A program made the position numbers and the translations under genes. DNA of 64,000 nt from positions 29,636,001 to 29,700,000 of the forward strand of contig NW_027266270.1 of NCBI RefSeq assembly GCF_022045235.1, given 5' to 3'. This document shows positions 688-54,589 of this stretch, piece after piece (within the stretch, counting starts at the first letter, position 1; every line of letters starts with the position of its first letter). This DNA comes from Haliotis cracherodii. Its lineage: Eukaryota. A model generated the notes under the pieces. It was not told where the DNA came from. It ran no database searches and was given only the letters and a program-made list of their open reading frames with translations.

Positions 688-755
688 CTTGAGAACAGTT
701 CACTTGTTAATGGTTCTCAGGTAGAAGGAGACTCAACGAATGAGATGTGCTCACT

Positions 756-3700: not shown

Positions 3701-4703
3701 AGACCGTTCTGGCATCTGTACGGTTATTTATACCTTCGCAGAATTTTTTCCAGTCTCTACTTTTGGCTATTTGGACTAGTTTTTGAACCTGGTGGTTTAG
3801 TTCGTGGGCTATGTTTAAATATTTGTAGTCGCGTTTTGCTTTATTGAAGGCTGATTTACGTTTTCGTCTAGTCTGTTCTATTTCCTCATTCCACCATGGT
3901 ACCGTCGGTTTGCCTGTCTTAGATACTTTGAAGGGGATGGAGGTTTTGGCTGCGTTTATTATATAGTCTGTTAGGTTTTTACAATAGGTTTCTGGATCAT
4001 TATTTTCTATTTCGTTTAAGTTAGCTTCGTTGCAGATATCTTGGAATTGGTCCCAGTTAGCTTTGTTGTAATGGAATTTTGGTTCTTGGTTTTCTGTTTG
4101 GATTGGTACGTTTGTATTTCCTATGGTTATGTTTATGGGGAAGTGGTCGCTACCTAGCGGGACGTCGTGCACTTCCCATTGAGTGCTTTGGGCTAGATCT
4201 GCGGTGCATATGGTTAGGTCGATAGCCGACATTTTTTGGTTTATCTTATCGTACCTCGTGGGTTGGTTGCTATTAAGGAGTACTAGGTCGTTTGTTTCTA
4301 TCCATTCGGAGATTAATTTGCCATGAGTATCTATTTTATCATCTATGCTCCATGTAGGATGGTGAGCGTTAAAGTCTCCTAGGAATATAGTAGATTTATC
4401 GCTTATTTTGAGTAGTTTGTTTAGATCCTCAGGTTGGACTTTTTGTTCCGCCCAGTGGTAAATATTTATGATGTTTATGTTTCGGTTATTTAATGTGATT
4501 TTAATGCCGTTGGCTTCTAGGTTTGGCGTGTCTATTTTTATTTCTTCGTAATTTATATCTTCCCTGATAAATATGATTAGTCCTCCTGCGGCTCTTCTTG
4601 TTTTCGGTTTAGCTCTGTCAGTTCTAACTGAGTTGTAGTTAGGTAGTGTGAATTTCGATTTTTTTGAGAATTTGGTTTCCTGTATACAAGCAATGTGAGG
4701 GCC
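756..4703 (-). mobile_element. I-group non-LTR retrotransposon (subfamily A1), 5'-truncated, inserted at the copy-1 core promoter
   Basis: (TAAG)n 3' tail at ~756-775. TSD ATGTGCTCACT at 745-755 and 4704-4714. Near-identical to the element at 37141-42944. Confidence 0.95.
1032..4703 (-). CDS. LINE ORF2 (APE endonuclease, RT, RNase H, CCHC), open from the truncation point and lacking the first ~29 codons
   Basis: GDFNAH and SDHFPI (APE); YRPISL, QSGF, PQGSILSP, FADD (RT); YTDGS, TAEL, TDSLS, WIPAHVGIYGNENAD (RNase H); CPHCKQPETPEHALIHC. Confidence 0.93.
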   Translation of the reverse strand, partial: GPHIACIQETKFSKKSKFTLPNYNSVRTDRAKPKTRRAAGGLIIFIREDINYEEIKIDTPNLEANGIKITLNNRNINIINIYHWAEQKVQPEDLNKLLKISDKSTIFLGDFNAHHPTWSIDDKIDTHGKLISEWIETNDLVLLNSNQPTRYDKINQKMSAIDLTICTADLAQSTQWEVHDVPLGSDHFPINITIGNTNVPIQTENQEPKFHYNKANWDQFQDICNEANLNEIENNDPETYCKNLTDYIINAAKTSIPFKVSKTGKPTVPWWNEEIEQTRRKRKSAFNKAKRDYKYLNIAHELNHQVQKLVQIAKSRDWKKFCEGINNRTDARTVWRKIHAIRGLKRHKKKPNINNSTNPAQKANNLANHFSAVSSNSNFSQKFQDKLKTENKPTKEPNNNNLEINQPYTMEELLYVIQNRKKGTAPGLDLTSYQIIKKLPLKLLQALLKLYNLIYLNGQVPTPWKQALVIPIPKPNKPANQANSYRPISLTSNLCKVMESMVKNRLQHYLTQNNTINPDQSGFTPGRSTLDNLARLEQDIKTGQLNKQYTTGIFLDFSKAFDMVWHDGLIQKLKKIGLKGQIINYIQDFLNNRKITVCIDQTLSDQCPLENGTPQGSILSPTLFNIMINDLFEGLSPKVNTSKFADDGAIWIRTKSMKMATNLLQKSLNKIQQWADKWGFSLNSEKTTGIVFKHKNMKPASPILQLNNQTIKFQKQTKFLGLIFDEHLTWDAHIQNLTTKCSKDLNTLRCLTGSNWGASKDTLLSLYISLIRSKLDYGCAIYNTLNNSLSKKLDSIQYQALKLITRTQHGTSYTSLQALTGEMPLSLRREQLSLNFWAASQSNPLIQNLINQNISPKNQALARKHPLLTPISQRITNYLNEHQIKNLKQNCKQSNIFTPKLKIPKIDTTLASQINKQTDPNIAKTTTLAYIHKNWPNWCHIYTDGSSDPTSKHTGFGVHTTQPTKTTQSFRLPNNQSIFTAELMGMASALHNQESKNNQKILILTDSLSGLQALQNKNTKNRPKLINQILKSSNDLTKAGKQITFLWIPAHVGIYGNENADKAAKLSLKIPEISLNLPISKTEIKSVNKQKITKKWHNLYLNSNSKIKRVLSKPLTKPKILHPSKKIDRVITKLQTGHTNLNNHLKKFKKHTTGNCPHCKQPETPEHALIHCTHYLTHRTALQTTLNLNKALTLEAILNPQNKLENFKALGVFLIKTELIKRI

Positions 4704-4727
4704 ATGTGCTCACTACCATCCGTAGAG

Positions 4728-12304: not shown

Positions 12305-13660
12305 TCACAACTGGAATATGCCAGACAGGAACTCCTCACAATGCTTGGAAGCAACTACGGCTTTGGCAGATCGGGGTCTCCTGGTCCTGTGTCTCTTATT
12401 TGCAAACCACTTTCGGAGCTGAGAAAGTGTGATGCCTCCCTTGTTGGCCATGTCCTCAGCTTCTGTATGAGTTGGGTAGGGGTTGTTGAGATGCTCATGG
12501 TACCACGATTCCATCAAGGTGATGGATTCAGGATTGAGGTTTCTGCTGGCAGGACGGGACAGCTTCTTGTTTTGATTTTCTAGATTGTTAAGACTTCTCT
12601 CGATGCTGGTGAAGACCAGGTGGAGCTGGTCAGTATATGTGTTGGTCAGCCAGTTGTGGTAGTCCGTGGGAAAGAAACCATCTTGAAGACACTGTTCATG
12701 CTCCTTCTGAATAGATGACGAATGGAAGGCAAGGAAGCTGGATAGTTCTTTAACCTCTGCTGGGAACCTTGACTGGAGTGACTGAAGTCTATTCTCAAGA
12801 GCTGACTGACGATCGGAGGAAAGGCAGTTGGTAGTCTTCATTGTTGAAACTCTATCAAGTGTTTTTGAGATGATGTCATCAACAGCTTTACCAATGTCCG
12901 GTCTGGGGGAAGACGGCAGCTTGAGGTCAAGTGGTCGCGTCTCTGTGACAGGGTTGATGTCCATACATTTTGAATGTGGGCGAGTGGCAACTGATATTTG
13001 CGTTGGTGTAGACAGGGCAGGGGTGTTTGGAATCGATACTGGATGGATGGGCGGAATTGTTGGACTAGAAATCGTCCCCGTTTTGCTGGAAGGTAATAAG
13101 GATGGACTCAATGGTGCACTGGAAAACCCCAACGACTGGGCTGGAAGAAAGCATGGACTTGGTGGCAGGAATGCTGGACTCGGTGGTAGGGTGTAGCTGG
13201 AAGGCATGTAGGAGCCTGGTCTGAAGCTGGAAGTGTAGTACCTGGTGGAGCAGGGAGGGAAGAAACTGTAGGGGCTGGAGAAGCAGGTTGCCTGGAGGTA
13301 GGTGGGAGATGCCATCGGGTGGAGGCTTGAGAGAGTTGGTACATGGTGGTGGGTGTCAGCAACTGGCAGTGTGAGGGATGGCACACAACGTCTCTTGGGC
13401 AGAGGAGTTGATGTGTGCTGAGGTGCCCCTGCAATAAAGGAAATATTGTATAACATACTCAGGGTAAGCAATGGCATGGATACGGCATAGACATTACCCA
13501 ATGGCACTTTGAATAAGAAGGACTTGAACAATGAGGAGATCTCACTCATTTTATTCCATCTATAGATTAGAACTTGATACTAGAACACTATGTGGAAGGA
13601 CTTACCAATACCAGAATTGACGTGAAAGGAATCATCAACAGGAGTTTTCAAGTCAGCCAT
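12305..13660 (-). CDS. TALE-class homeobox protein, array copy 2 (392 aa): exon 1 13606-13660, exon 2 12305-13428
   Basis: Homeodomain with three-residue loop extension: LMESWYHEHLNNPYPT...QLRKWFANKRHR. A phase-1 GT..AG intron (13429-13605) joins MADLKTPVDDSFHVNSGIG to APQHTSTP in frame. Pro/Ser-rich N-terminal half. Confidence 0.9.
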
Positions 13661-13724
13661 CTTTGATTTTAGGAACGTTCACTTGTTCAAGGTTTTGAGG
13701 TAGCTGGGTATCAACAGACTCAAC

Positions 13725-14230
13725 AAGTGAGATGTGCTCACCTTCCAACTGTGGAGTTTTATGCTCTACTCACCTCTCTGGCGTCATCATCTTCAACCCC
13801 ATTGGCTGTAAGGACTCTTTGATCCATGGCTTCTTTTTGAACATTTAACTTTCTTTGATCTAGGGTTTCACTAACCAATTGCTTACTCTTTCTTTATAAC
13901 ACCAAGCCAATCAGCTAATTGGAATTAAGTTTGGCCTCTTGATTCGTCTTTGCCTTATCAACATTCAAGGATGACGAGATTATCGAGTTTTGATAGACGG
14001 TCCTTGAGTGTGTACATGACGGAAAGCGGTTGATGGGGGTTTCATTGGTTTCATTGATCTCTGGCTTCTTTAACGCTGTGTTCCCTTTATGTTTGATTGG
14101 CTCTGGTGTCTTTCGTGATACTGGTTAGTGTTTTGATAGCGTTAAACAAACATTTTCCTTTGGCGGGATTTCCTGATTGACGTATCTTTCTTTGATTTTC
14201 TCTGACACAAACCAATTAGTTTATTGGATT
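13725..14230 (-). promoter_or_regulatory. Predicted homeobox promoter (Inr-like TCACTT, CATAAAA box, CCAAT cluster, TCF-like sites), repeated in each unit
   Basis: CATAAAA at 13763-13757; CCAAT at 13801, 13875, 13907, 13918, ~14044, ~14096, ~14212, ~14223; CTTTGAT at 13817, 13853, 14190. Confidence 0.65.
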
Positions 14231-14411
14231 GATTGTTTCGACTACAAGTTGGGTTTTTCACATTAACGAATGATAATGATGTTTCGTACTACTATCTTAA
14301 GCAGCTGAACGCAACGTTAAATTACACCCAGACTACACTCTGCGGAGTTGTGGGTAGAATATTTGCATAGCAAGCATAGTACATTATAAACAATATTGTA
14401 GTCAATGCGTA

Positions 14412-15845
14412 GGGCCGCGTCCCAATCAAACCCTCTCATCCAAAACTTAATAAACCAAAATATCAGCCCCAAAAACCAAGCTCTAGCACGTAAACACCCC
14501 TTACTTACCCCAATATCCCAAAGAATAACAAACTACCTAAATGAACACCAAATTAAAAATCTTAAACAAAACTGCAAACAATCAAATATCTTCACCCCTA
14601 AACTTAAAATACCCAAAATAGACACAACACTAGCTAGCCAAATAAATAAACAAACCGACCCAAACATAGCTAAAACCACCACACTAGCATACATACACGA
14701 AAATTGGCCAAATTGGTGTCACATTTACACGGACGGATCTACAGATCCGACCTCCAAACACACAGGTTTCGGAGTCCATACCACACAACCAACTAAAACC
14801 ACACAATCCTTCCGACTCCCAAACAACCAATCAATATTCACGGCAGAACTAATGGGCATGGCCTCAGCCCTCCATAATCAAGAATAAAAAAAACACCAAA
14901 AAAATCTTAATACTTACCGACTCCCTAAGTGGACTGCAAGCTCTCCAAAATAAAAATACCAAAAACCGACCTAAATTAATAAATCAAATACTTAAAAGCT
15001 CCAACGACCTAACTAAGGCAGGCAAACAAATAACCTTCTTGTGGATACCCGCCCACGTAGGAATATACGGTAATGAAATCGCCGATAAAGCAGCTAAACT
15101 ATCCCTCAAAATCCCAGAAATAAGCTTAAACTTACCCATCTCAAAATCAGAAATTAAAAGTGTAAACAAGCAAAAAATCACCAAAAAATGGCATAACCTT
15201 TATCTAAACTCAAATAGCCAAATCAAAAAGTACTCAGCAAACCACTAACCAAACCAAAAATTCTCCATCCATCAAAAAAAATCGACAGAGTAATCACTAA
15301 ACTCCAAACAGGACACGCCAACCTAAATAACTATCTAAAAAAATTTAAAAACATACTACAGGTAACTGCCCACACTGCAAACAACTAGAAACCCAAGAAC
15401 ACGCACTCATCCACTGCACACACTACCTAACACATCGAACCGCATTACAAACCACCCTCAATCTAAACAAGGCTCTCACTCTAGAAGCAATACTAAACCC
15501 ACAAAATAAACTAGAAAACTTCAAGGCCTTAGGCGTATTCTTAATCAAAACGGAACTAATAAAACGCATCTAAAAACACTATTATCTACCAAATCAAAAT
15601 TACATAAACAAACAAACATCCACCATACCCAGCTCCCTTAGTTCTCCTCCCCAACCCCATCGGCATCTATTCCAAATCTCAAAATTCCAAAATTCTATAT
15701 AAGCAACCCCTAAAGCCCCCTCTTGGGTTGCACACACCACTTTCGCCCCTTTCGGAAACACATTAAATGGCCTGGGCGGGCCCGTGTGCGAAATACGCAT
15801 CTGTCGGAAAGCGCACGTTAAATCTCCAAAGTAAGTAAGTAAGTA
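14412..15845 (+). mobile_element. I-group LINE (subfamily A2), 5'-truncated (RNase H region to 3' end), defective
   Basis: TSD AGTCAATGCGTA at 14400-14411 and 15846-15857; (TAAG)n tail; premature stop and frameshifts. The empty site is visible in other units (e.g. ~20180). Confidence 0.95.
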
Positions 15846-18082
15846 AGTCAATGCGTAACGTTAGTAAACACAATTGTTGATCAATGTTATTCCCTATTTT
15901 GATTTATACCATATGTTCCCGTATATTGTTTTCACGTTAACAGTTGACTTGTTTGTTCGTGTGTTTGTGACAGTTGTCACCTGTGGGGCAGGATACGCTC
16001 ATCTTTTCGCCCAAACCTGGTGTCATCACTATTTGATACTGATGCATTAACGCATGCATTTGATATAGTCGGATTGGTGTAATGGACCTTTAGAAAAGAT
16101 TTCTTTGGATTAATATGAATTAATGTGCACATCCTTATATGTGATACTAGTGTTGAGGATGTGATGTTAACGTTGAATATTTGATATTAATGTTGAACGT
16201 ATCCTAGTTATGGTGAATGTATGTTTGGATGAGTATTACAGTTATATCGTGAGGTATACGACATGTCAGCTTGATGCATGTGAATTTGAAACATGTTTAA
16301 AGGTGTTTAAATTCTAAGCATGTTTGGATTAAGGGAATGTTGTGTTTAGGCTATGAAGCGATGGTTCATATCATGTGTTTAGAATCTAAACGAGTTTAGA
16401 CAGAACACACATATGTGCATACCGTTAAGGATCCAAACACGTTCCTAAACATGTTTTGTATGTGTTTACATTCTACACACATTTTTACAGTGTGGTTTAA
16501 GTGGTGAATTATATTAATTTGATAAGTATGCAATCTACCTGGCAGGATTAGTATTCGCTGTTTACTAACCTTCTGGCCGCTGTTACTAATTTAAGTTAGT
16601 CGAATCAACTAGACTTTTTTCTCAGTGTAGGGAATTAGTTAAACATAAGATAATAAGATAAACTGATTCCTTCCTGTTGAAAATGACTGACATACAAACG
16701 AATATGCGCATTTATTAGGCAGGATATGTTTGCGCTCACTTCTTCAAAACACGCTTTTGTAAAAGGGGAGTTGATAACTGATTTTAATGGATATTTTCAA
16801 TGATCCGCCAAAATCACGCATCAGACTCCATTGGGTGGAAAATGCAAAAGAGCAGTGACAAATGTGTAAATGGGTCACTGAAGAATCAGTGATAACGCCT
16901 GGTGTTCGCGAAAAAGCCATGTGAAGGAGCACATGCTTTTTGTGATAGTAATGTTAAATAAGTGATGTCAATTGTGAACGTTTCATAGTTGTGGGGATGT
17001 ATGTTTTAAGCAGTATTTCAATTGTATCGTTAGTTATAAGCCATGTCAGCTTGTTGTATGTGGACGACAAGTCCAAAGTGAAGCAGGCTTTAGATGTTTA
17101 CCGCCTCCGTAAAACCCTCGAGCTCGGACATGGCGTTGCTAAACTGTAACACATAATCAGGGCGAGTCTCGGATTCGAATCCATGTGATATTTATGCTGA
17201 ATGTGTGGTGCATAATGTTGAATGTGTTATAGTAAAGTAAACTGTACAAAATTCACGTTGCACGAGTCATAGTAGTGTAAAATTGCGATATTAATGTTGA
17301 TGTTATAGTTATGTCGGATGTGTTATAGTTATGTTGAGCTTTACTGCATATACGGTGATAATGTGTGATGCATAATGACATCCTACAACTGCCCAACTGT
17401 ATAATGCATACGTATCCTGGATAGACACCTTCCTTTTGATCTGCTTCTAGGAATGTGTACAATACAAGTGTTCCATGTTAGATTTCCGATCTCGCACCTT
17501 TGACATCGGTTGATATAGTCTCCATATAAACCAGTTTGTTTAAATATCGATATATGTATGTGTGTATTTGTGTGTGACTTGTGTATTAGCATCATATTAT
17601 TTGCAACAGCAGGTACAATTATTCCTAATTTATTATTTTATGTTCACTTTACTCTTATTGATTGTTAAATGTCCTTTGTAGGGACAGGTGTTCAAATAGG
17701 TTTAACCAGTTAACCAATCTCGTTCCTTTTTGGTAATAAATATTGTTTAAGTCATAGTCTCCATATTCAGTAATGACATATCTAAGGAACAATACAATTC
17801 TAAAACTGTGTATTAATGTGACATATTTTATTTGTCATCAAAACAATAATAACAACTTCAGCACTCACATCCACAAATATCACAGTTATAGCACAGAATA
17901 AAGATAATATAGCACTATGTTTCAGACATGGGGATTGATGTTATACAAGTGACGGTCCTCTTGAACATATATATTGCTCTTAAAGGTATTTCCAATAGCA
18001 CTACGAGGGTCTCAGACATTATCATACAGACTTCATATTTGATATCAGTTACTATCATTCAAGTGATATTATCGTCCATATT

Positions 18083-31059: not shown

Positions 31060-32263
31060 TCACAACTGGAATATGCCAGACAGGAACTCCTCACAATGCT
31101 TGGAAGCAACTACGGCTTTGGCAGATCGGGGTCTCCTGGTCCTGTGTCTCTTATTTGCAAACCACTTTCGGAGCTGAGAAAGTGTGATGCCTCCCTTGTT
31201 GGCCATGTCCTCAGCTTCTGTATGAGTTGGGTAGGGGTTGTTGAGATGCTCATGGTACCACGATTCCATCAAGGTGATGGATTCAGGATTGAGGTTTCTG
31301 CTGGCAGGACGGGACAGCTTCTTGTTTTGATTTTCTAGATTGTTAAGACTTCTCTCGATGCTGGTGAAAACCAGGTGGAGCTGGTCAGTATATGTGTTGG
31401 TCAGCCAGTTGTGGTAGTCCGTGGGAAAGAAACCATCTTGAAGACACTGTTCATGCTCCTTCTGAATAGATGACGAATGGAAGGCAAGGAAGCTGGATAG
31501 TTCTTTAACCTCTGCTGGGAACCTTGACTGGAGTGACTGAAGTCTATTCTCAAGAGCTGACTGACGATCGGAGGAAAGGCAGTTGGTAGTCTTCATTGTT
31601 GAAACTCTATCAAGTGTTTTTGAGATGATGTCATCAACAGCTTTACCAATGTCCGGTCTGGGGGAAGACGGCAGCTTGAGGTCAAGTGGTCGCGTCTCTG
31701 TGACAGGGTTGATGTCCATACATTTTGAATGTGGGCGAGTGGCAACTGATATTTGCGTTGGTGTAGACAGGGCAGGGGTGTTTGGAATCGATACTGGATG
31801 GATGGGCGGAATTGTTGGACTAGAAATCGTCCCCGTTTTGCTGGAAGGTAAGAAGGATGGACTCAATGGTGCACTGGAAAACCCCAACGACTGGGCTGGA
31901 AGAAAGCATGGACTTGGTGGCAGGAATGCTGGACTCGGTGGTAGGGTGCAGCTGGAAGGCATATAGGAGCCTGGTCTGAAGCTGGAAGTGTAGTACCTGG
32001 TGGAGCAGGGAGGGAAGAAACTGTAGGGGCTGGAGAAGCAGGTTGCCTGGAGGTAGGTGGGAGATGCTATCGGGTGGAGGCTTGAGAGAGTTGGTACATG
32101 GTGGTGGGTGTCAGCAACTGGCAGTGTGAGGGATGGCACACCACGTCTCTTGGGCAGAGGAGTTGATGTGTGCTGAGGTGCTCCAGAACACTATGTGGAA
32201 TGACTTACCAATACTAGAATTGACGTGAAAGGAATCATCAACAGGAGTTTTCAAGTCAGCCAT
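31060..32263 (-). pseudogene. TALE homeobox copy 6, probable pseudogene
   Basis: The intron is reduced to 25 nt (32184-32208) and has lost its acceptor, so read-through frameshifts. The promoter is separated from the gene by 10.6 kb of LINEs. Exon 2 is still open. Confidence 0.8.
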
Positions 32264-32344
32264 CTTGGATTTGAAGAACGGTTTGTTCAAGGTTCTGAGG
32301 TAGCTGTGTATCAACAGACTCAACAAGTGAGATGTGCTCACCTT

Positions 32345-33328
32345 ACTTACTTACTTACTTACTTACTTTGGAGATTTAACGTGTGCTTTCCGACAGGTGC
32401 GTATTTCGCACACGGGCCCGCCCAGGCCATTTAATGTGTTTCCGAAAGGGGCGAAAGTGGTGTGTGCAACCCAAGAGTGGGCTTTAGGGTTTGCTTATAT
32501 AGAATTTGGGAAGTTTTTGAGATTTGGAATAGATGCCGATGGAGTTGGGGAGGAGAACTAAGGGAGCTGGGTAGGGTAGATGTTTGTTTGTTTATGTGAT
32601 TTTGATTTGGTAGGTTATTGTGTTTTTAGATGCGTTTTCCGTTTTGATTAAGAATACGCCTAAGGCCTTGAAGTTTTCTAGTTTATTTTGTGGGTTTAGT
32701 ATTGCTTCTAGAGTGAGAGCCTTGTTTAGATTGAGGGTGGTTTGTAATGCGGTTCGATGTGTTAGGTAGTGTGTGCAGTGGATGAGTGCGTGTTCTTGGG
32801 TTTCTAGTTGTTTGCAGTGTGGGCAGTTACCTGTAGTGTGATTTTTTAAATTTTTTTAGGTGGTTATTTAGGTTGGTGTGTCCTGTTTGGAGTTTAGTGA
32901 TTACTCTGTCGATTTTTTTTGATTGATGTAGAATTTTTGGTTTGGTTAGTGGTTTGCTGAGCACTCTTTTGATTTGGCTATTTGAGTTTAGATATAGGCT
33001 ATGCCATTTTTGTGATTTTTTGCTTGTTTACACTTTTAATTTCTGATTTTGAGATGGGTAAGTTTAAGCTTATTTCTAGGATTTTGAGGGATAGTTTAGC
33101 TGCTTTATCGGCGTTTTCATTACCGTATATTCCTACGTGGGCGGGTATCCACAAGAAGGTTATTTGTTTGCCTGCCTTACACTAAATGGTCTGGCCAGGC
33201 CCGTGTGCGAAATTCGCTACAGTCGGAAAGCGCACGTTAAATCTTCTATATCAGTCAGTCAGTCAGGGTATCTTTGGAGGCTCCCCAGTTAGAGCCAATT
33301 AGGCATCTTAGGGTGTTTAGGTCTGTAC
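32345..33328 (-). mobile_element. I-group LINE (subfamily A2), 5'-truncated and internally deleted; first member of the stack
   Basis: (TAAG)n tail abuts TGCTCACCTT (32335-32344), which recurs at 33329-33338. About 825 bp are deleted internally and replaced by a foreign fragment. Confidence 0.9.
33180..33266 (+). mobile_element. 3' terminus of a third related LINE family or LINE-tailed SINE, with a (TCAG)4 tail
   Basis: AAATGGTCTGGCCAGGCCCGTGTGCG...CAGTCGGAAAGCGCACGTTAAATCT matches the A/B 3' motif but with distinct variants and a different tail; opposite orientation. Confidence 0.8.
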
Positions 33329-33338
33329 TGCTCACCTT

Positions 33339-36300
33339 ACTTACTTACTTATATTGGAGATTTAACGTGCGCTTTCCGACTGCAAGCGTATGTCGCACAC
33401 GGGCCCGGCCAGGCCATTTAATGTGTTTCCAAAAAGGGGAAAAGTGAGTTTGTGCAACCCAGGAGGGGGGCTTTAGGGGTTGCTTATATAGTAATTTTGA
33501 AATTTTGAGATTTGGAAAGAATGCCAAGAGTGGGTGGGGGACGAACTAAGGGAGCTGTGTGTGTTGGGTGGTTATTAAATAAGGTAGTTTTGGTTTTAAT
33601 ATTTTATTTGGTGTTTAAATGCGGCTAATTAGTCCCGTTTTTATTAGGTATATGCCTAAGGCTTTGAATTTTTCTAATTTATTTTGTGGATTTAGGATTG
33701 ATTCTAGTGTAAGTCCGGTTTTAAGATTTAGGGTGGTCTGTAGTGTTGTTCGGTGTGTTTGGTAGTGTGTGCAGTGAATGAGTACGTGTTCTGGTGTTTC
33801 TTGTTGTTTGCAATGTGGACAGTTTCCTGTTTTGTGTAGATTAGCTATTTAACGGTGATTATTTAGTTTGGTATGGTCTGTTTGTAGTTTGGTAATTATT
33901 TTGTCGATTTGTTTGGATGGGTGTAGTATTTTGGGTTTATTTAGGGTTTTTTTGAGTACTTTCCTGATTTGGCTATTTGAGTTTTGGTATATATTTTGCG
34001 ATTTTTTGTTGATTTTTTGTTTAGTGACACTTTTGATTTCTGATTTTGAGCTGGGTAAGTTTAAGCTTATTTCTGGGAGTTTAAGGGATAATTTTGCTGC
34101 TTTATCTGCCTTTTCATTGCCAAAGATTCCTACGTGGGCGGGGATCCAAATGAAATTTATTTGTTTACCTAACTTAGTTAAGTTGTTTGAGCTATTGAGT
34201 ATTTGATTTATTAGTTTGGGGCGGTTTTTAGTGTTTTTATTTTTGAGGGCTTGTAGTCCACTGAGGGAGTCGGTTAGGATGAGGATTTTTTGGTGTTTTT
34301 TAGATTGCTGATTGTGTAGTGCTGAGGCAATGCCCATTAGTTCGACCGTGAATATGGATTGGTTGTTTGGGAGTCGGTAAGATTGTGTGTCTTTGGTTGG
34401 TTGTGGGATGTGGACTCCGAAACCTGTGTGTTTTGAGATCGGATCTGAGGATCCGTCTGTGTATATGTGACACCAATTTGGCCAATTTTCATGTATGTAT
34501 GCTAGTGTGGTGGTTTTAGCGATGTTAGGATCGGTCTGTTTATTTAGTGTATCGGCTAGTGTTGTGTCTATTTTTGGTATTTTAAGTTTTGGAGTGAAGA
34601 TATTGGATGATTTATTGTTTTGTTTAAGATTATTTATTTTGTGTTCATTTAGGTAATTGGTTATTCTTTGGGAAATTGGAGTAAGTAGTGGATGTTTCCG
34701 GGCTAGGGCTTGGTTTCTAGGGCTAATATTTTTTTTTATTAAGTTTTGGATGAGAGGGTTTGATTGGGACGCGGCCCAGAAGTTTAGGGTAAGTTGTTCC
34801 CTACGTAGTTTAAGTGGCATTTCTACTGTTAAGGCCTGGAGTGAGGTGGAGGAGGTGCCATGTTGAGTTCGTGTGATTAGTTTGAGGGGCCTGATACTGG
34901 ATTGAGTCTAGTTTTTTAATGAGAGAGTTGTTTAAGGTGTCGTAAATGGCACTGCCATAGTCTAGTTTGGATCTAATTAGTGATATATAGAGTGAGAGGA
35001 GAGTGTTTTTAGAGGCCCCCCAGTTGGAGCCGGTAAGGCATCTTAACGTGTTTAGGTCTTTGCTGCATCTGGTTACAAGGTTTTTAATGTGAGCATCCCA
35101 GGTGAGATGTTCATCGAAGATTAATCCTAAGAATTTGGTTTGTTTTTGGAATTTGATTGGTTTGTTGTTTAGTCGGAGGTTTAGGGAGGCGGGTTGCTTA
35201 TTTTTGTGTTTAAATACTATTCCTGTGGTTTTTTCTGAGTTTAGGGAGAAGCCCCATTTGTCAGCCCATTTTTGTATTTTATTTAGAGATTTTTGTAGTA
35301 AGTTTTGGGCCATTTTAATGCTTTTAGTGCGGATCCAGAGGGCTCCATCATCCGCGAATTTTGATGTGTTTACTTTGGGGGATAGTCCCTCGAATAGATC
35401 GTTAATCATAATATTGAAGAGTGTTGGGCTTAGGATACTGCCCTGGGGAGTGCCATTTTCTAGGGGACATTGGTCCGATAGCGTTTGGTCTATGCCCACG
35501 GTGATTTTGTGGTTTGTTAGGAAACTTTGGATGTAGTTAATTATTTGACCTTTAAGACATATTTTTGAAGTTTTTGTATTAGCCCGTTATGCCAAACCAT
35601 GTCGAATGCTTTGGAGAAGCCTAGAAAGATAACTGTAGTATATTGTTTGTTAAGTTGGCCTGTTTTAATGTCCTGCTCTAGTCGGGCGAGGTTATCTAAG
35701 GTTGAGCGTCCAGGAGTGAAACCGCTTTGGTCTGGATTTATTATGTTGTTTTGTTCTAAGTAGTGTTGTAACCTGTTTTTTGCCATTGATTCCATTACTT
35801 TGCATAAGTTAGAAGTTAGGGAGATTGGTCTGTATGAATTAGCCTGGTCAGCTGGTCTATTGGGTTTGGGGATTGGTATGACCAGGGCTTGTTTCCAAGG
35901 TGATGGGACCTGTCCGTTTAGATATATGAGGTTATAGAGTTTCAGAAGAGTTTGGAGTAGTTTGGGTGGTAATTGTTTAATTATCTGGTATGAAGTAAGC
36001 CTGGGGCTGTGCCCTTTTTCCTATTTTGTAGGACGTGGAGTAGTTCTTCCATTGTGAAATGGAGATTAATTTCTAGGTTATTATCTTTTGGCTCTTTGGT
36101 AAATTTGGTTTCTGATTTTAGTTGTTCCTGGAATTTTTGATTGAAGTTGCTATTCCTACTGACGGCCGAGAAGTGATTTGCTAGGTTATTAGCTTTTTCA
36201 GTGGGGTTTGTTGAATTGTTTATGTTGGGAGTTTTTTTTATGACGTTTAATGCCCCTATTGGCGTGGATTTTGCGCCAAACTGTTCTGGCGTCTGTATGA

Positions 36301-37128
36301 TGGTTAATTTCTTCGCAAAAAATTTTCCAGTCTCTTGTTTTAGCTGTTTTAACTAAGCTTTGTACTTTGTGATTTAGTTCACGTGCTATCTTTGGGTGTT
36401 TGAAGTCACGTTTGGCTTTATTGAATGCGGATTTGCTTTAACGCCTAGTTTGTTCTATCTCCCCGTTCCACCAAGGAACCGAGGGTTTGCCTATGCTGGT
36501 TATTTTGAAAGGAATGGAGTTTTTAGCTGCGTTTATCATGCAGTCAGTGGGGTTTTTGCAGTAGATTTCGGGGTCGTTACTTTCTAGGTCAGCTAGGTTA
36601 GCCTGGTTGCAAATTTCCTGAAATTTGTCCCAGTCGGCTTTGTTGAAGTGGAATTTAGGTTCCTGGTTTGGGGCTGGTGTTGGGATGTTTACGTCTCCTG
36701 TAGTTATATTTATGGGGAAGTGGTCACTACCTAGTGGTACCCCGTGTACTTCCCATTGAATACTTTGGGCTAAATCTGGGGTGCATATGGTTAAGTCGAT
36801 AGCCGACATTTTGTGGTGTATTTTGTCGTATCTAGTAGGTTGGTTGTTATTTATTAGTATTAGGTCATTTTGTTCTATGCATTCTGAGATGAGTTTTCCG
36901 TGTTTATCTATTTTATCTTCTATACCCCAGGTAGGGTGGTGGGCATTAAAGTCTCCTAGGAAGATTGTAGATTTATTGCCTATTTGGTGGAGGGTGTTTA
37001 AATCCTCAGGTTTGACCTGTTTTTCTACCCAGTGGTATATATTTATGATATTAATTTTTTGGTTGCTATTTGTTATTTGGATACTGTTTGCTTCTAGGTT
37101 TGGTGTGTTTATTTTTAGTTCTTTGTTC
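33339..37128 (-). mobile_element. I-group LINE subfamily B (clearly diverged from A), 5'-truncated in the APE domain, multiply frameshifted; second member of the stack
   Basis: ORF2 fragments at 36438-37130, 35541-35795, 34810-35499 and 33849-34820 carry the same APE/RT/RNase H motifs. (AAGT)n tail. Flanked by ACTGCTCACCTT at 33327-33338 and 37129-37140. Confidence 0.93.
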
Positions 37129-37411
37129 ACTGCTCACCTTACTTACTTACTTACTTTGGAGATTTAACGTGCGCTTTCCGACTGATGAGTATTTCGCACA
37201 CGGGCCCGGCCAGGCCATTTAATGTGTTTCCGAAAGGGGCGAGGGTGGTCTGTGCAACCCAAGAGGGGGCTTTAGGGGTTGCTTATATAGAATTTTGGAA
37301 TTTTGAGATTTGGAATAGATGCCGATGGGGTTGGGGAGGAGAACTAAGGGAGCTGGGTATGGTGGATGATTGTTTGTTTATGTGATTTTGATTTGGTAGG
37401 TTATTATGGTT

Positions 37412-40400
37412 TTAGATGCGTTTTATTAGTTCCGTTTTGATTAAGAATACGCCTAAGGCCTTGAAGTTTTCTAGTTTATTTTGTGGGTTTAGTATTGCTT
37501 CTAGAGTGAGAGCCTTGTTTAGATTGAGGGTGGTTTGTAATGCGGTTCGATGTGTTAGGTAGTGTGTGCAGTGGATGAGTGCGTGTTCTGGTGTTTCTGG
37601 TTGTTTGCAGTGTGGGCAGTTACCTGTAGTGTGTTTTTTAAAAAAATTTAGGTGGTTATTTAGGTTGGTGTGTCCTGTTTGGAGTTTAGTGATTACTCTG
37701 TCGATTTTTTTTGATGGATGTAGAATTTTTGGTTTGGTTAGTGGTTTGCTGAGCACTCTTTTGATTTGGCTATTTGAGTTTAGATATAGGCTATGCCATT
37801 TTTGTGATTTTTTGTTTGTTTACACTTTTAATTTCTGATTTTGAGATGGGTAAGTTTAAGCTTATTTCTGGGATTTTGAGGGATAGTTTAGCTGCTTTAT
37901 CGGCGTTTTCATTACCGTATATTCCTACGTGGGCGGGTATCCACAAGAAGGTTATTTGTTTGCCTGCCTTAGTTAGGTCGTTGGAGCTTTTAAGTATTTG
38001 ATTTATTAATTTAGGTCGGTTTTTGGTATTTTTGTTTTGGAGGGCTTGCAGTCTACTTAGGGAGTCAGTAAGTATTAAGATTTTTTTGTGGTTTTTGGAT
38101 TCTTGATTGTGGAGGGCTGAGGCCATGCCCATTAGTTCTGCCGTGAATATTGATTGGTTATTTGGGAGTCGGAAGGATTGTGTGGTTTTAGTTGGTTGTG
38201 TGGTATGGACTCCGAAACCTGTGTGTTTGGAGGTCGGATCTGAGGATCCGTCCGTGTAAATGTGACACCAATTTGGCCAATTTTTGTGTATGTATGCTAG
38301 TGTGGTAGTTTTAGCTATGTTTGGGTCGGTTTGTTTATTTATTTGGCTAGCTAGTGTTGTGTCTATTTTGGGTATTTTAAGTTTAGGGGTGAAGATATTT
38401 GATTGTTTGCAGTTTTGTTTAAGATTTTTAATTTGGTGTTCATTTAGGTAGTTTGTTATTCTTTGGGATATTGGGGTAAGTAAGGGGTGTTTACGAGCTA
38501 GAGCTTGGTTTTTGGGGCTGATGTTTTGGTTTATTAAGTTTTGGATGAGAGGGTTTGATTGGGACGCGGCCCAGAAATTTAAGCTTAGCTGTTCCCTGCG
38601 TAGACTTAGTGGCATTTCTCCTGTTAGGGCCTGAAGTGAGGTGTAGGAGGTGCCATGTTGGGTGCGTGTAATGAGTTTGAGAGCCTGATATTGTATTGAG
38701 TCACGTTTTTTAGATAGAGAGTTGTTTAGGGTGTTGTATATGGCGCAGCCGTAGTCTAGTTTTGATCTAATTAGTGATATGTAGAGAGAGAGGAGAGTAT
38801 CTTTGGAGGCTCCCCAGTTAGAGCCAGGTAGGCATCTTAGGGTGTTTAGGTCTTTACTGCATTTAGTTGTTAGGTTTTGGATGTGAGCATCCCAGGTGAG
38901 ATGTTCATCGAAAATAAGTCCTAAGAATTTGGTTTGTTTTTGAAATTTGATTGTTTGATTGTTTAGCTGGAGGATTGGGGAGGCGGGTTTCATGTTTTTA
39001 TGTTTGAATACTATTCCTGTTTTTTTTTTCTGAGTTAAGGGAGAAGCCCCATTTGTCAGCCCATTGTTGTATTTTATTAGAGATTTTTGGAGTAGATTTT
39101 TGGCCATTTTCATGCTTTTAGTGCGGATCCAGATGGCTCCATCATCCGCGTATTTTGATGTGTTTACTTTAGGGGATAGACCCTCGAATAGATCGTTTAT
39201 CATTATATTGAAGAGGGTGGGGCTGAGGATACTGCCCTGGGGAGTGCCATTTTCTAGGGGACATTGGTCCGATAGAGTTTGGTCTATACCCACGGTTATT
39301 TTACGATTGTTTAGGAAGTCCTGGATGTAGTTTATTATCTGACCTTTGAGTCCTATTTTTTTAAGTTTTTGTATTAGCCCATCGTGCCATACCATGTCAT
39401 AAGCTTCAGAGAAGTCTAAGAAGATGCCAGTGGTATATTGTTTATTTAGTTGTCCTGTCTTAATATCTTGTTCTAGTCGGGCGAGGTTATCTAGGGTTGA
39501 GCGGCCAGGAGTGAAACCGCTTTGATCTGGGTTTATGATGTTATTTTGGATTAAGTAATGTTGTAATCTATTTTTAGCCATTGATTCTATTACTTTACAT
39601 AAGTTTGAAGTTAGGGATATTGGTCTATATGAGTTAGCTTGATTAGCTGGTTTATTAGGTTTAGGGATTGGTATGACTAGGGCCTGTTTCCAGGGAGTAG
39701 GAACCTGTCCGTTTAGGTAGATGAGATTGTATAGTTTGAGTAGTGCCTGGAGTAGTTTTAGGGGGAGTTTTTTAATTATTTGGTAAGAGGTTAGGTCTAA
39801 TCCTGGGGCTGTGCCCTTTTTCCTGTTTTGGATTACGTAGAGGAGCTCCTCCATTGTATAGGGTTGATTTATTTCTAGATTGTTAATGTTTGGTTCTTTT
39901 GTGGGTTTGTTTTCTGTTTTAAGTTTATCTTGGAATTTTTGGCTGAAGTTGCTGTTACTGCTAACGGCCGAAAAGTGGTTGGCGAGATTATTTGCTTTTT
40001 GGGCGGGGTTGGTTGAGTTGTTAATGTTAGGGTTTTTTTATGTCGTTTTAAGCCTCTAATGGCGTGGATTTTGCGCCAGACCGTTCTGGCATCTGTACGG
40101 TTATTTATACCTTCGCAGAATTTTTTCCAGTCTCTACTTTTGGCTATTTGGACTAGTTTTTGAACCTGGTGGTTTAGTTCGTGGGCTATATTTAAATATT
40201 TGTAGTCGCGTTTTGCTTTATTGAAGGCTGATTTACGTTTTCGTCTAGTCTGTTCTATTTCCTCATTCCACCATGGTACCGTCGGTTTGCCTGTCTTAGA
40301 TGTTTTGAAAGGGATGGAGGTTTTGGCTGCGTTTATTATATAGTCTGTTAGGTTTTTACAATAGGTTTCTGGATCATTATTTTCTATTTCGTTTAAGTTA

Positions 40401-41167
40401 GCTGCGTTGCAGATATCTTGGAATTGGTCCCAGTTAGCTTTATTGTAATGGAATTTTGGTTCTTGGTTTTCTGTTTGGATTGGTACGTTTGTATTTCCTA
40501 TGGCTATGTTTATGGGGAAGTGGTCACTACCTAGCGGGACGTCGTGCACTTCCCATTGAGTGCTTTGGGCTAGATCTGCGGTGCATATGGTTAGGTCGAT
40601 AGCTGACATTTTTTGGTTTATCTTATCGTACCTCGTGGGTTGGTTGCTATTAAGGAGTACTAGGTCGTTTGTTTCTATCCATTCGGAGATTAATTTGCCA
40701 TGATTATCTATTTTATCATCTATGCTCCATGTAGGATGTTGAGCGTTAAAGTCTCCTAGGAATATAGTAGATTTATCGCTTATTTTGAGTAGATTGTTTA
40801 GATCCTCAGGTTGGACTTTTTGTTCCGCCCAGTGGTAAATATTTATGATGTTTATGTTTCGGTTATTTAATGTGATTTTAATGCCGTTGGCTTCTAGGTT
40901 TGGCGTGTCTATTTTTATTTCTTCGTAATTTATATCTTCCCTGATAAATATGATTAGTCCTCCTGCAGCTCTTCTTGTTTTCGGTTTAGCTCTGTCAGTT
41001 CTAACTGAGTTGTAGTTAAGTAGTGTGAATTTCGATTTTTTTGAGAATTTGGTTTCCTGTAAACAAGCTATGTGAGGGCCTTTATTTAGTTTAAATTTAG
41101 TTTTTAGTTCATGGCCGTGGGAGGTGAGTCCGTTGGCGTTCCACTGAAAAATATTTAGTCCTTCCAT
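37412..41167 (-). CDS. LINE ORF2 (APE-RT-RNase H-CCHC) with several homopolymer frameshifts
   Basis: Begins MEGLNIFQWNANGL...ACLQET (APE N-terminus); ORF pieces at 39875-41167, 37791-39854 and 37412-37756. Breaks fall in A/T runs and may be real or sequencing errors. Confidence 0.88.
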
Positions 41168-41210
41168 TATTGGTTTCGGGTGATTGGTGATTTAGTTTTT
41201 AGTTTTTATT

Positions 41211-42853
41211 TTATTCGGTGAGTTCTTTTAGATGGAGGTTAAAGAGGAAGAAGGGAAGATCGGTTAATTTTAGATTGAAAGCTACTTTGTGGAAGGATTC
41301 CATACTAGCTTTTGGTGAGTTTTGACTATGCATGTATGCTAGGAGTAAGGTGAGGTTATTTAGGTTTGGGCTGTTGGCTGGTTGGGAAGTTTGGTTTGTT
41401 TTAGTTGGAGTAGTGTCTATTGTTTCCTCAGTAGTGGAGAAATCTTCGTCATTGGTTGGATTAGGTTTAGCTGGTTGAGTTTCCATGGGGGAGGCATGTG
41501 ATGTGGAGGGTTGTGAAGGTGTTGGCGGGATGGGTGTAGCTGATGTTTTCTTAGTGTTTGTGTTTTGTTGTTGTGCTTGCTTGTGGGAGAGTGTTGTTGC
41601 CATATGGGCTGTAGGGTGCTTGGATGAGGGTCGTGTTGTGGTGGTCATTTTGAGGTTTGTTTTGCATGCGGGGGTTGATGTTTTGGCTATGTGAGATGTG
41701 GGAGGGTTTGTGGTTGGTTGAGTGGCTGCTTGTGTGTGTGAGGTGGGTGCGGTTTCTCGGTAGGGGTCCCAGACAGAGCTGTCGGTTATGGGTGTGGTGT
41801 TTGTTTGTGGGATGGTGTTTGGGTGTGGTGTAGGGAGGAGTGGTTTAGATGCAGGTGTAGCAAATTTTCGTGTTTGGATTTTAGCCGTTTCTATGTTTAT
41901 GTGTTTGTTGACCTGCTGGGAAAGTGTGTGTCTGTGTGGGCATTGGTTTGAAAGTGAGGTGTGTTGGGTGGATTTGCAGTGGATGCACCAGGGTGTGCAT
42001 GTGCCTGGGCAGTCTGTTTGTGCGCATTTTTTATACATTTAGTTTTAGGGTATGTGCATTGGGAAGCATTGTGGTTGTATTTGAGGCACTTTGAACATTG
42101 CTTAACCTGCTTTATATAGGGTTTGACTTCTAAGTTGGTGTGGGCTCCGAAGGATATGTGTTTGGGGGCTTCAGGGAATTTAGCGGGTTTTTTAAAGTTG
42201 ATTATGACAATGGAGGTTGGGACCGTTTTTCCGTTTCTAGTTGAGGTTATTCTGCGCGTGCTGGTGATTAGGGGTTGAGGGTTTTGGTCTTGGTTTATGT
42301 TAGCTTCTAGAGAGTATAATTGTAAGTCCTCAGTTGTTTCCCTTGGGTTAACCCTAATTACGCCTCGTGTATATTGTTGCCAATTAGGTGTTTGTTTGAT
42401 TACCGTGACGTGGAATATTTGAGTTATTTTATTTGCTGCGTTGTAAGATTCTCGGTTAGGAAAGATTATCTGGTATCCTTTGTTGGCTTTTTTAATATTG
42501 TTGTAATTTATTTTTTGTCTTTTGAACCAAAGTCCTATTTTATCTGCCGAAAGGTCTAGTGAGAGAGTGGTGCCTGAGCCTGCTGAGAAGAAGTAGAGGG
42601 CGAAGGTGGTGAGGAAGGCGGCCGGGGAGGGTGTTGGCGATGGAGGTGGAGTGGATGTGTCGAGTTTGCGTTTTTTGGTGTTTTGTGGTGGCGAGTTAGC
42701 TGGTTTGGTTGGGGTGGTGTATGTCGTGTTTTCGCCATACTCGGTCGGGACGATGTTTTCGAGTGACCTCCCAGAAGTGTTGTGCGCTTCCGCAGGCGTG
42801 GGTGAGTAAGGAGCTGGAATGTCTGCGAGTGTGGCGTTGCGGGTGTCAGTCAT
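41211..42853 (-). CDS. LINE ORF1 gag-like protein with zinc knuckles (one frameshift in an A-run near 42030)
   Basis: CSKCLKYNHNASQC (CX2CX4HX4C) followed by further Cys/His clusters (CIHCKSTQHTSLSNQC); Thr/Pro-rich tail. Confidence 0.85.
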
Positions 42854-42944
42854 ATTGTTTGGGTGTTGTGTTGGAGAGCGTGTGTTGTGGTAAGTGGTGG
42901 TGGAGTGTTTTGGGGAGGTGAGTTGGTTTGTTGTTTTTACTTGG

Positions 42945-43330
42945 ACTGCTCACCTTCCATTTGTGGAGTTTTATGCTCTACTAACTTCTTTCGCTTCATC
43001 ACCTTAAACCTCATTGGCTGTAAGGACTCTTTGATCCATGGCTTCTATTTGAACATTTAACTTTCTTTGATCTAGGGTTTCACTAACCAATTAACTACTT
43101 TTTCTTAACAACATCAATCCAATCAGCTGATTGGAATTTCAGCGATCTCTGGCTTCTTTAACACTGCGCTCCCTTTATGTTTGATTGGCTCTGGTTTCTT
43201 TCATGTCTCGTGTCATTGGTTAGTGTTTTGACAGCGTTAAACAAACAGTATCCATTGGCGGGATATTCCTGATTAGCTTATCTTTCTTTGATTTTCTCTT
43301 TTACAAACCAATCAGTTTATTGGATTGTTT
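42945..43330 (-). promoter_or_regulatory. Original promoter of homeobox copy 6, now directly upstream of the full-length LINE
   Basis: Homologous to 13741-14230. CATAAAA at 42975-42969, CCAAT at 43013, CTTTGAT at 43029, 43065 and 43286. Confidence 0.75.
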
Positions 43331-43519: not shown

Positions 43520-43735
43520 GGGCACGCCAGAAACCTATGATTGTGGGTTCGAATCCCGATTCGCCCCGATTATGTTTCTAGGTTTGTCAGCACAATACCC
43601 ATGCTCGTGGGTTTCACCAAAGTGGTAAACGTCTGAGACCTGCATCACTTCGGGCTTTCCTCCCACATTAAGCTGACACGCCGTATAACTGGAATACTGT
43701 TAAAAATGGCGTAAAACCCAACTCACGCACTCACT
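43520..43735 (+). mobile_element. tRNA-derived SINE family 3 (5'-partial)
   Basis: GGTTCGAATCC B box; homologous to 54590-54858; CTGGAATACTGTT...GGCGTAAAAC...CACTCACT end. Confidence 0.6.
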
Positions 43736-54472: not shown

Positions 54473-54589
54473 TAATAGTTCATCAGTAATATATATCATG
54501 TAACATTACAAATTCAATAATTAGAAATTGCATTAAAGAGAACAAACATAAAAAGACCACAAACATTCCATTCCAGAATACCTTGGAGT

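What the first reader, a model, noticed from the sequence alone, without database searches (positions are those of the whole stretch)
42854..43330. Promoter capture: the full-length LINE begins where the host promoter should initiate
The element's first base (42944) is 31 nt downstream of CATAAAA, the canonical TATA-to-TSS distance. The intact CCAAT and CTTTGAT-rich homeobox promoter lies immediately upstream. The 5' UTR is only ~90 nt before the ORF1 ATG. Host transcription would give a near-exact unit-length element RNA. Established knowledge: spiralian-specific TALE genes are characteristically expressed in oocytes and cleavage stages. Inference: the element gains expression in cells that can enter the germline, perhaps without needing a strong internal promoter.
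Basis: inference. Interest (0 to 1): 0.85.

Follow-up and report, generated by a model that had tools for sequence, protein, structure and literature searches.

The report
Truncated LINE at a TATA-guided landing site
The abalone LINE next to this homeobox promoter is a 5'-truncated, broken copy, and it sits 31 bases below the TATA box because this whole LINE family tends to integrate at that distance from TATA boxes.

Summary
Genome: Haliotis cracherodii. Everything is on the minus strand.

**Observation.** The geometry is right. CATAAAA lies at 42975-42969, the LINE begins at 42944 (31 nt on), ORF1 starts 91 nt later, and the conserved CCAAT/GATCAAAG promoter lies upstream.

**"Full-length" is wrong.** At least 30 genomic copies extend 778 nt further, to a common 5' end (CAGTTGCAG). 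This copy also has frameshifts in ORF1 and ORF2. No other copy carries its junction.

**TSS.** A spliced RNA contig fixes the gene model: exon 1 with ATG at 13660, a GT-AG intron, 392 aa. It reaches within 15 nt of the predicted TSS, with no cover upstream.

**Main result.** The spacing is a family rule.
- In 72 other 5' junctions, TATAWA starts 26-40 nt upstream in 27, against 1-6 in control windows.
- Full-length and truncated copies both show it.
- It is orientation-specific (TATAAA 13, TTTATA 1).
- The TSD starts about +21/22 from the TATA.
- The same site was hit four times in this array, and at least three times in an unrelated tandem array on another contig.

**Not tested.** Whether the TATA drives the element. 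Sibling notes s1-826187 and s1-826235 cover the stack and the paralogue hit.

The parts
42957..43138 (-). Conserved proximal promoter of the terminal (5th) SPILE-type TALE homeobox array copy, now orphaned from its gene body
   Evidence: It is 89-90% identical to 13745-13926 and the other intact copies. TATA-like, CCAAT, 2x GATCAAAG and the CCAAT/ATTGG palindrome are all conserved.
42969..42975 (-). TATA-like box CATAAAA (TATAAAA in diverged paralogue copy 0)
   Evidence: Invariant in alignment A1.
42947..42956 (-). Promoter-side copy of the target-site duplication AAGGTGAGCA
   Evidence: The same 10-mer lies at 37131-37140, 33329-33338 and 32335-32344. It occurs once at each intact copy, for example 13735-13744.
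42945..42946 (-). GT, either filler or part of a 9-bp TSD (GTGAGCAGT) re-used by the 2nd and 3rd insertions
   Evidence: GT follows the TSD at all three 5' junctions of the stack but not at the empty site.
42854..42944 (-). Retained last 91 nt of the LINE 5'UTR; the family's first 778 nt are missing
   Evidence: Alignment to full-length copies starts at element position 779.
37141..42944 (-). LINE copy C (5.8 kb): ORF1 (CCHC gag-like), ORF2 (APE-RT-RNase H), (AAGT)n tail; 98.3% identical to intact copies; ORF1 and ORF2 frameshifted
   Evidence: Pfam. ORFs of 350/275 and 438/748 codons, against 597 and 1260 in intact copies. Indel list.
33339..37128 (-). LINE copy B, a subfamily 82% identical to C, 5'-truncated in ORF2, flanked by the same TSD
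32345..33328 (-). Oldest insert A': an 830-nt LINE 3' fragment plus a 149-nt piece holding an inverted 3' end of a related LINE
32185..32344 (-). Downstream TSD copy followed by exon 1 of array copy 5 (the gene body continues to 30766; most of the intron is deleted)
13735..13744 (-). Empty target site in intact copy 1, 19-28 nt downstream of the first base of CATAAAA (13763-13757)
13606..13733 (-). Exon 1 of the intact gene (predicted TSS near 13732-13735; ATG 13660-13658); GT-AG intron 13605-13429; exon 2 13428-12305
   Evidence: Spliced contig in run X1. Phase arithmetic. NCBI 392-aa model P0001 has the predicted N-terminus.
755..4703 (-). Independent, 5'-truncated LINE at the same promoter position in diverged paralogue copy 0; TSD GTGAGCACAT at 4704-4713 and 745-754; TATAAAA starts at 4734, 31 nt from the junction
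   Evidence: Flanks are about 70% identical to the array, while the LINE is 98% identical to C and 99.7% to the contig C67 copy.
14412..15847 (+). Third target site in the window: LINE 3' fragment on the + strand, TSD TCAATGCGTA, with TATAAA starting at 14385, 27 nt upstream in the element's orientation
   Evidence: The empty site is seen at 20180-20191.

Best explanation
42854-43330 is the 5' junction between the orphaned promoter of a SPILE A/C-clade TALE homeobox gene (black abalone) and a young LINE copy. The LINE has a gag-like CCHC ORF1, an APE-RT-RNase H ORF2 and an (AAGT)n tail. This copy is 5'-truncated by 778 nt and has lost both reading frames.

It lies 31 nt below the TATA-like box because the family chooses its targets that way.
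- The first-strand nick falls about 21-22 nt downstream of the first T of a TATA(A/T)A motif.
- The TATA has the same orientation as the element.
- Short AG/AAG(T) microhomology to the tail occurs at the nick.
- The TSD is 7-10 bp.
Together these put the 5' junction 26-37 nt below the TATA, which is where RNA polymerase II would start.

Shown here: the truncation, the broken ORFs, the empty sites, the repeated hits and the family-wide TATA enrichment with its orientation.

Inferred, not shown:
- The TATA is read as a TBP-bound or bent promoter element in accessible chromatin. This would explain why promoters of two embryonic-type tandem arrays are hit again and again.
- Full-length copies, whose own 5' end is an initiator-like CAGTT, gain a TATA+Inr core promoter by landing there.

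For this particular copy, host-driven transcription is geometrically possible. It is unproven, and it has left no detectable offspring.
For: Truncation and breakage:
- 34 junctions share one 5' terminus 778 nt upstream of this copy's start.
- ORF and indel comparison with intact copies.

Family rule:
- TATAWA starts 26-40 nt upstream of 27 of 72 other 5' junctions, against 2, 6 and 1 of 72 in equal-sized control windows (Fisher p = 4.7e-5).
- After collapsing related flanks: 20 of 64, against 2, 2 and 1. Shuffled flanks average 1.7 (maximum 7 in 2000). Rotated flanks average 5.6 (maximum 13 in 2000).
- It is present in full-length (17/37) and truncated (11/35) copies.
- In the window -42..-22, TATAAA occurs 13 times and TTTATA once.
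- The TSD's left edge is at about +21/22 in array copy 5, copy 0, the C67 array, L037, L040 and L056.

Re-use of sites:
- Four insertions at one site in two TALE paralogues.
- At least three insertions at one site, 30 nt below TATAAAT, in an unrelated 2536-bp tandem array on contig C67.
- Repeated hits in other repeat families.

Empty sites show that the TATA pre-exists in the target.

TSS support: a spliced contig reaches 13718, and that run gives no cover from 13758 to 14380.
Against: - About 60% of junctions lack a canonical TATAWA at the expected place. Many of these have only AT-rich variants there, so the rule is a preference and not an absolute.
- The sample is 72 junctions (64 independent flanks) out of at least 1200 copies. 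No second LINE family from this genome was run as a control.
- One in-window site has the TSD edge at +16-18 rather than +21-22.
- Nothing here shows TBP involvement or that any copy is transcribed from the target's TATA.
- The run used for the TSS is contigs of a run only guessed to be RNA. The splice supports RNA but cannot show a true 5' end.
Confidence: 0.8

Rival explanations
1. One reading: a full-length LINE happened to land exactly at the host TSS and thereby captured a germline or cleavage-stage promoter, giving a unit-length RNA without needing its own promoter.
For: The spacing is correct and the promoter motifs are intact. The TSS position is supported by a spliced contig. The gene is a SPILE A/C-clade TALE.
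Against: The copy lacks 778 nt of 5'UTR and has broken ORFs. Its junction is unique in the genome, and 87 of 90 exact matches to its first 23 nt are internal to longer copies. The same spacing recurs at unrelated loci, so no lucky event is needed. The promoter had already been separated from its gene by two older inserts.
Confidence: 0.07
2. Direct DNA reading. An element-encoded protein (ORF2p or the CCHC ORF1p) itself recognises TATA(A/T)A and nicks two helical turns away. Host TBP or promoter activity plays no part, and any expression benefit is incidental.
For: The spacing is tight and the orientation is strict. Many TATA-bearing targets look like ordinary intergenic or repeat DNA rather than promoters. 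Dead truncated copies obey the rule too.
Against: TATAWA is very common in a 1.18-Gb genome, yet the same few promoter sites were hit three to four times each. No DNA-binding domain beyond CCHC knuckles and APE was detected. Known APE-type LINEs read DNA close to the nick.
Confidence: 0.35
3. Purely local hot spot. The target GTGAGCA resembles the tail unit GTAAGTA, so tail-primer annealing alone explains the repeated hits, and the nearby TATA is a coincidence.
For: There is a 5/7 match between GTGAGCA and the tail unit. AG/AAG microhomology occurs at most 3' junctions.
Against: The C67 array site has an unrelated TSD (GGAGTCCTTC) at the same distance from its TATA. The 3' flanks of 30 other copies are diverse. 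The family-wide TATA peak cannot come from tail homology.
Confidence: 0.06
4. Retention bias. Insertions are random, but copies below a TATA are preferentially kept or amplified.
For: Some flanks are repeated, which could reflect segmental copying.
Against: The enrichment survives collapsing related flanks. It holds for short dead 3' fragments. Repeated hits differ in truncation point and subfamily, so they are separate events.
Confidence: 0.04

Closest known systems
Dictyostelium TRE5-A (APE-type LINE) and yeast Ty3: position-specific integration next to Pol III genes
   Same: Integration at a fixed distance from a promoter complex rather than at a fixed sequence. TRE5 inserts about 44-54 bp upstream of tRNA genes, and its ORF1 protein binds the TFIIIB subunits, including TBP. 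Ty3 inserts at Pol III start sites and needs TBP and Brf1. The TRE5-A promoter module works better with a tRNA gene upstream (PMC5911963).
   Different: Here the landmark is a Pol II-type TATA box, and the element lands downstream of it in the sense orientation at the expected Pol II start. No host-factor interaction has been shown. The preference is partial (about 30-40% canonical TATA).
Target-sequence-specific LINEs (R1/R2 in rDNA, SLACS/CZAR/NeSL in spliced-leader genes, Keno/Utopia in U2 genes)
   Same: Repeated insertion at one nucleotide position of tandemly repeated genes, head-to-tail stacks, and possible use of the target's transcription. [quoted passage not shown]
   Different: This family is dispersed. 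The 3' flanks of 30 copies are unrelated, and the tail+GGTGAGCA junction exists only in this window. The shared feature is a short motif at a distance, not a long target sequence. That SLACS/CZAR use the spliced-leader promoter is recalled from memory and was not checked here.
Insect I/jockey-type LINEs with an initiator-type internal promoter
   Same: CCHC gag-like ORF1; APE-RT(-RNase H) ORF2; 5' terminus resembling an initiator (CAGTT here; 31 of 34 full-length copies).
   Different: Clade membership by RT phylogeny was not tested. The insect elements are described (from memory) as TATA-less and self-sufficient, not as seeking a TATA in the target.
Host-promoter-driven 5'-truncated LINE copies (chimeric transcripts)
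   Different: No transcript evidence here. The placement is systematic rather than accidental.

Membership tests
APE-type LINE (non-LTR retrotransposon) | APE endonuclease and reverse transcriptase in ORF2 | tested here: met
   Pfam Exo_endo_phos_2 3e-19, RVT_1 9e-40, RNase_H 5e-19.
APE-type LINE (non-LTR retrotransposon) | Target-site duplications, simple-repeat 3' tail, variable 5' truncation | tested here: met
   TSDs of 7-11 bp, (AAGT)n tails, and truncation points spread over the element.
I/Nimb-like clade | RNase H after RT and CCHC gag-like ORF1 | tested here: met
   RNase_H domain. One canonical CCHC knuckle at ORF1 residue 253. Atlas look-alikes are CCHC proteins (lead only).
I/Nimb-like clade | Placement in the clade by RT phylogeny | not tested
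Full-length, competent element | Carries the family's 5' terminus | tested here: not met
   The copy starts at element position 779. Thirty-four junctions share the terminus, 31 of them with C before AGTTGCAG.
Full-length, competent element | Open ORF1 and ORF2 | tested here: not met
   ORF1 is split 350/275 and ORF2 438/748, against 597 and 1260 codons in intact copies.
Target-sequence-specific LINE (R1/R2/Tx1-type) | Nearly all copies flanked by one target sequence | tested here: not met
   The 3' flanks of 30 copies are diverse. The junction 20-mer is found only three times, all in this window.
Position-specific integration relative to a promoter element (Ty3/TRE5-A-like) | Fixed distance and orientation to a promoter element at many unrelated loci | tested here: met
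   27/72 against 1-6/72 in controls. 20/64 after collapsing related flanks. TATAAA 13 against TTTATA 1.
Position-specific integration relative to a promoter element (Ty3/TRE5-A-like) | Dependence on a bound transcription factor | not testable with these tools
   Needs biochemistry or occupancy data.
Promoter capture (host-promoter-driven element RNA) | Transcripts starting at or reading across the junction | not testable with these tools
Promoter capture (host-promoter-driven element RNA) | Offspring copies sharing this copy's 5' end | tested here: not met
   The junction is unique. One other copy ends within 1 nt, but it is no closer in sequence (97.97%) than unrelated copies.
SPILE A/C-clade TALE homeobox gene | TALE homeodomain and orthology to classified SPILE genes | tested here: met
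   Homeobox_KN 2e-12. The homeodomain matches 61/63 residues of H. discus hannai HDSC00981CG00050 and CG00080, which the supplement of PMC8524836 lists as SPILE A/C-clade. No tree was built here.

The most novel reading that the evidence does not exclude
This abalone LINE family uses TATA boxes, probably TBP-bound ones in open embryonic or germline chromatin, as landing beacons. It nicks about two helical turns downstream, in the TATA's orientation. Every new copy is therefore delivered to a Pol II start site. A full-length copy, with its initiator-like CAGTT terminus, acquires a complete TATA+Inr core promoter. This would be a Pol II counterpart of Ty3/TRE5-A targeting. It would make 'promoter capture' a built-in strategy, with tandem arrays of cleavage-stage genes as tolerated, repeatedly hit targets.
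Probability: 0.35. Interest if true: 0.9.

Novelty: new variant of a known kind. Interest (0 to 1): 0.72.

Why it matters
LINEs of the APE type are usually described as having loose, AT-rich nick preferences or else strict sequence targets. A dispersed family that measures a fixed distance from a TATA box would be a third mode.

Consequences if it holds:
- It links integration directly to Pol II core-promoter architecture.
- It predicts a mutational bias against TATA-containing (often developmental or inducible) promoters.
- It explains the LINE stacks that decapitate copies of tandem gene arrays.
- It offers a way for 5'-truncated copies to be expressed.

All of this can be tested with existing abalone genomes and embryo RNA. 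For the finding as written, the lesson is narrower. The striking 31-nt spacing is real. It reflects target choice by the element, not a lucky capture, and the copy concerned is truncated and broken.

Tried and rejected
- **Strict sequence-specific targeting of GGTGAGCA.** Rejected. The tail+GGTGAGCA 20-mer occurs three times in 1.18 Gb, all in this window. Other 3' flanks are unrelated.
- **Parent-offspring link between this copy and the C67 copy that begins within 1 nt of the same position.** Rejected. They are 97.97% identical, no closer than random family members (98.3%). With about 30 truncation points in 779 nt, near-coincidences are expected; 676/677, 760/763 and 396/396 also occur.
- **The 414-aa ORF with ATG at 13549 as the gene's start.** Rejected. 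That ATG lies inside a GT-AG intron that is removed in a spliced contig. The real start is at 13660.
- **Pfam on ORF1 and on the C67 array's 138-codon ORF.** No hits.
- **Sequencing runs.** All listed holders are Logan contigs of uncertain type. Contigs cannot show true 5' ends. Two runs (X3, X15) cover the promoter as well and behave like DNA.
- **Literature searches for a TATA-directed LINE.** Nothing found in the held library. That is not proof of absence.
- **Spliced model.** The joined protein was not sent to any search. Exon 2 was searched by reference, and the exon-1 phase was worked out arithmetically.

Full report
**Setting**

The window is Haliotis cracherodii contig C7, 29,636,001-29,700,000. 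On the minus strand it holds a tandem array of a TALE homeobox gene: four intact copies, a fifth damaged copy, and a diverged paralogue at the window's start. It also holds five insertions of one LINE family at three distinct target sites.

**The observation**

- CATAAAA lies at 42975-42969.
- Homology to the LINE family begins at 42944, 31 nt downstream.
- ATG of ORF1 is at 42853, 91 nt further on.
- Upstream, 42947-43138 is 89-90% identical to the proximal promoters of the intact copies.
- That stretch keeps the TATA-like box, a CCAAT at -71, two GATCAAAG at -89 and -125, and a CCAAT/ATTGG palindrome. All are also kept in the paralogue, whose flanks are otherwise only about 70% identical.

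The coordinates and the motif content are therefore right.

**"Full-length" is wrong**

- A search of the genome with the element's first 200 nt found at least 209 candidates, 40 scored at 98-100% identity. In almost all of them, element sequence continues upstream of CCAAG.
- Thirty-four junctions start at one shared 5' terminus 778 nt further up, and 31 of them have C directly before AGTTGCAG.
- An intact copy is 6576 nt long: 5'UTR 869 nt, ORF1 541 aa, ORF2 1252 aa.
- The window's copy is 98.3% identical to it. It has a +2 indel near 42035 and a -1 indel near 40039 that break ORF1 and ORF2, plus further indels.
- ORF2 has APE, RT and RNase H domains. ORF1 has a CCHC knuckle.

**The host gene and its start site**

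The 414-codon ORF is not the real coding sequence. A contig from run X1 skips 13427-13604. Read on the gene strand, this is a canonical intron: donor G|GTAAGT, acceptor TTGCAG|G.

- An ATG at 13660 in exon 1 is in phase with exon 2.
- The 392-aa NCBI model P0001, returned by a search with exon 2 alone, has exactly the predicted N-terminus.
- I did not search the joined model.

The spliced contig reaches 13718. That run has no cover from 13758 to 14380, while two DNA-like runs cover it throughout. This fits a TSS near 13732-13735, about 30 nt below the TATA-like box. It argues against a start at the upstream TATAAAG. Contigs cannot prove a 5' end.

The homeodomain matches 61/63 residues of two H. 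discus hannai genes. The supplement of PMC8524836 classes those genes as SPILE A/C-clade. That paper reports A/C-clade genes as zygotic from the 4-16-cell stage, and D/E-clade genes as maternal.

**The site is re-used**

Between promoter and exon 1 of copy 5 lie three LINEs, head to tail. Each is bounded by AAGGTGAGCA, which is present once in each intact copy.

- One of the three belongs to a subfamily only 82% identical to the others, so these are separate events.
- The diverged paralogue carries a fourth, differently truncated insertion at the same place. Its TSD is GTGAGCACAT, and the spacing from its TATAAAA is again 31 nt.
- Sibling notes s1-826187 and s1-826235 already record these facts.
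- The family is not sequence-specific. The tail+GGTGAGCA junction occurs only in this window, and the 3' flanks of 30 other copies are unrelated.

**The family rule**

A check for offspring of this copy led to the rule.

- Of 90 exact matches to its first 23 nt, 87 are preceded by the element's own TCA.
- One other copy, on contig C67, begins within 1 nt of the same point.
- That copy sits 30 nt below a TATAAAT in an unrelated tandem array (2536-bp unit, a two-exon acidic ORF with no Pfam hit).
- The same array site was hit again by a copy truncated at position 240, and by a LINE-LINE stack with GGAGTCCTTC between the two members.

I then collected the 5' junctions of 72 other copies whose flanks are not LINE-derived.

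- TATAWA starts 26-40 nt upstream in 27 of them, against 2, 6 and 1 in equal-sized control windows (Fisher p = 4.7e-5).
- After collapsing related flanks the count is 20 of 64, against 2, 2 and 1.
- Shuffled flanks give a mean of 1.7 (maximum 7 in 2000). Rotated flanks give 5.6 (maximum 13 in 2000).
- Full-length (17/37) and truncated (11/35) copies both show it, so it is a property of integration rather than of survival.
- The motif is oriented with the element: TATAAA 13, TTTATA 1.
- No other position between TATA and junction is conserved.
- Where both junctions are known, the left edge of the TSD lies at +21/22 from the first T. Short AG/AAG(T) overlaps with the tail occur there.
- The third site in this window (14412, + strand) has TATAAA 27 nt upstream, with its TSD edge a few nt closer.

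**Interpretation**

The element is where Pol II should start because the family lands there by preference. Whether it reads the TATA directly or through TBP is open.

- I lean towards a TBP-bound or otherwise open promoter. A six-base motif alone cannot explain three or four hits on the same few promoters.
- The precedents, TRE5-A and Ty3, also work through TBP-containing complexes (PMC5911963).
- Full-length copies begin with an initiator-like CAGTT. Where present, their TATA lies 28-36 nt upstream of that C (one outlier at 41). The idea that the target supplies the TATA half of a TATA+Inr promoter is therefore attractive but untested.

For the copy in question, three things limit any claim of productive capture.
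- The promoter had already been cut off from its gene by two older inserts.
- The copy's ORFs are broken.
- It has no detectable offspring.

**Limits**

- The sample is about 6% of the family.
- No control family was run.
- The expression data are contigs.
- No reads could be laid on the junction.

Noticed in passing
window 12305-13763 (and the other array copies): The mechanical 414-codon ORF (ATG 13549) is not the gene. The real model has two exons: ATG 13660, GT-AG intron 13605-13429, 392 aa. It matches NCBI's model.
   Followed up: yes
window 32185-32210 versus 13430-13581: Array copy 5 has lost 152 nt inside the intron, including the 3' splice site. About 24 nt of intron remain, which throws exon 2 out of frame. 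It is a pseudogene independently of the LINE stack.
   Followed up: partly
L066/L067/L068/L069 (contig C67, 31.64-31.72 Mb): A tandem array (2536-bp unit) of an unknown two-exon acidic gene. Its promoter also has several GATCAAAG/CTTTGATC motifs upstream of a TATAAAT, like the TALE promoter. This suggests co-regulation. It was hit at least three times by the same LINE at one site.
   Followed up: partly
L016 and L030 (contig C2, about 59.195 Mb): A 557-bp segment spanning the end of the LINE 5'UTR and the start of ORF1 is tandemly triplicated in one copy.
   Followed up: no
window 33180-33328: Between LINE B's TSD and the A' fragment lies an inverted 3' end of a related LINE whose tail is (CAGT)n rather than (AAGT)n. 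A similar tail type flanks L028.
   Followed up: no
L014/L092/L099/L084 and L082/L094/L108; also L005/L008 and L024/L055: Independent LINE copies with different truncation points sit at the same TATATA-proximal position of other repeated sequences. These could be promoters of other mobile elements.
   Followed up: no
5' termini of full-length copies (L002, L003, L011, L071-L108): 31 of 34 full-length copies have C directly before AGTTGCAG, so the true terminus is an initiator-like CAGTT.
   Followed up: partly
window 755-4703 versus L066/L067: The truncated LINE in paralogue copy 0 is 99.7% identical to the C67 copy that has open ORFs. It is a very recent insertion, and younger than copy C (98% to either).
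   Followed up: no
window 43520-43732, 54586-54801, 11099-11220, 50818-50912: A short dispersed repeat (about 200 nt, 75-83% identity between copies) lies just upstream of the orphaned promoter and elsewhere in the window.
   Followed up: no
run X1, contig over 13195-13718: The spliced transcript contig carries T at 13427, the variant that array copy 5 has. It comes from a paralogue or allele other than intact copy 1.
   Followed up: no
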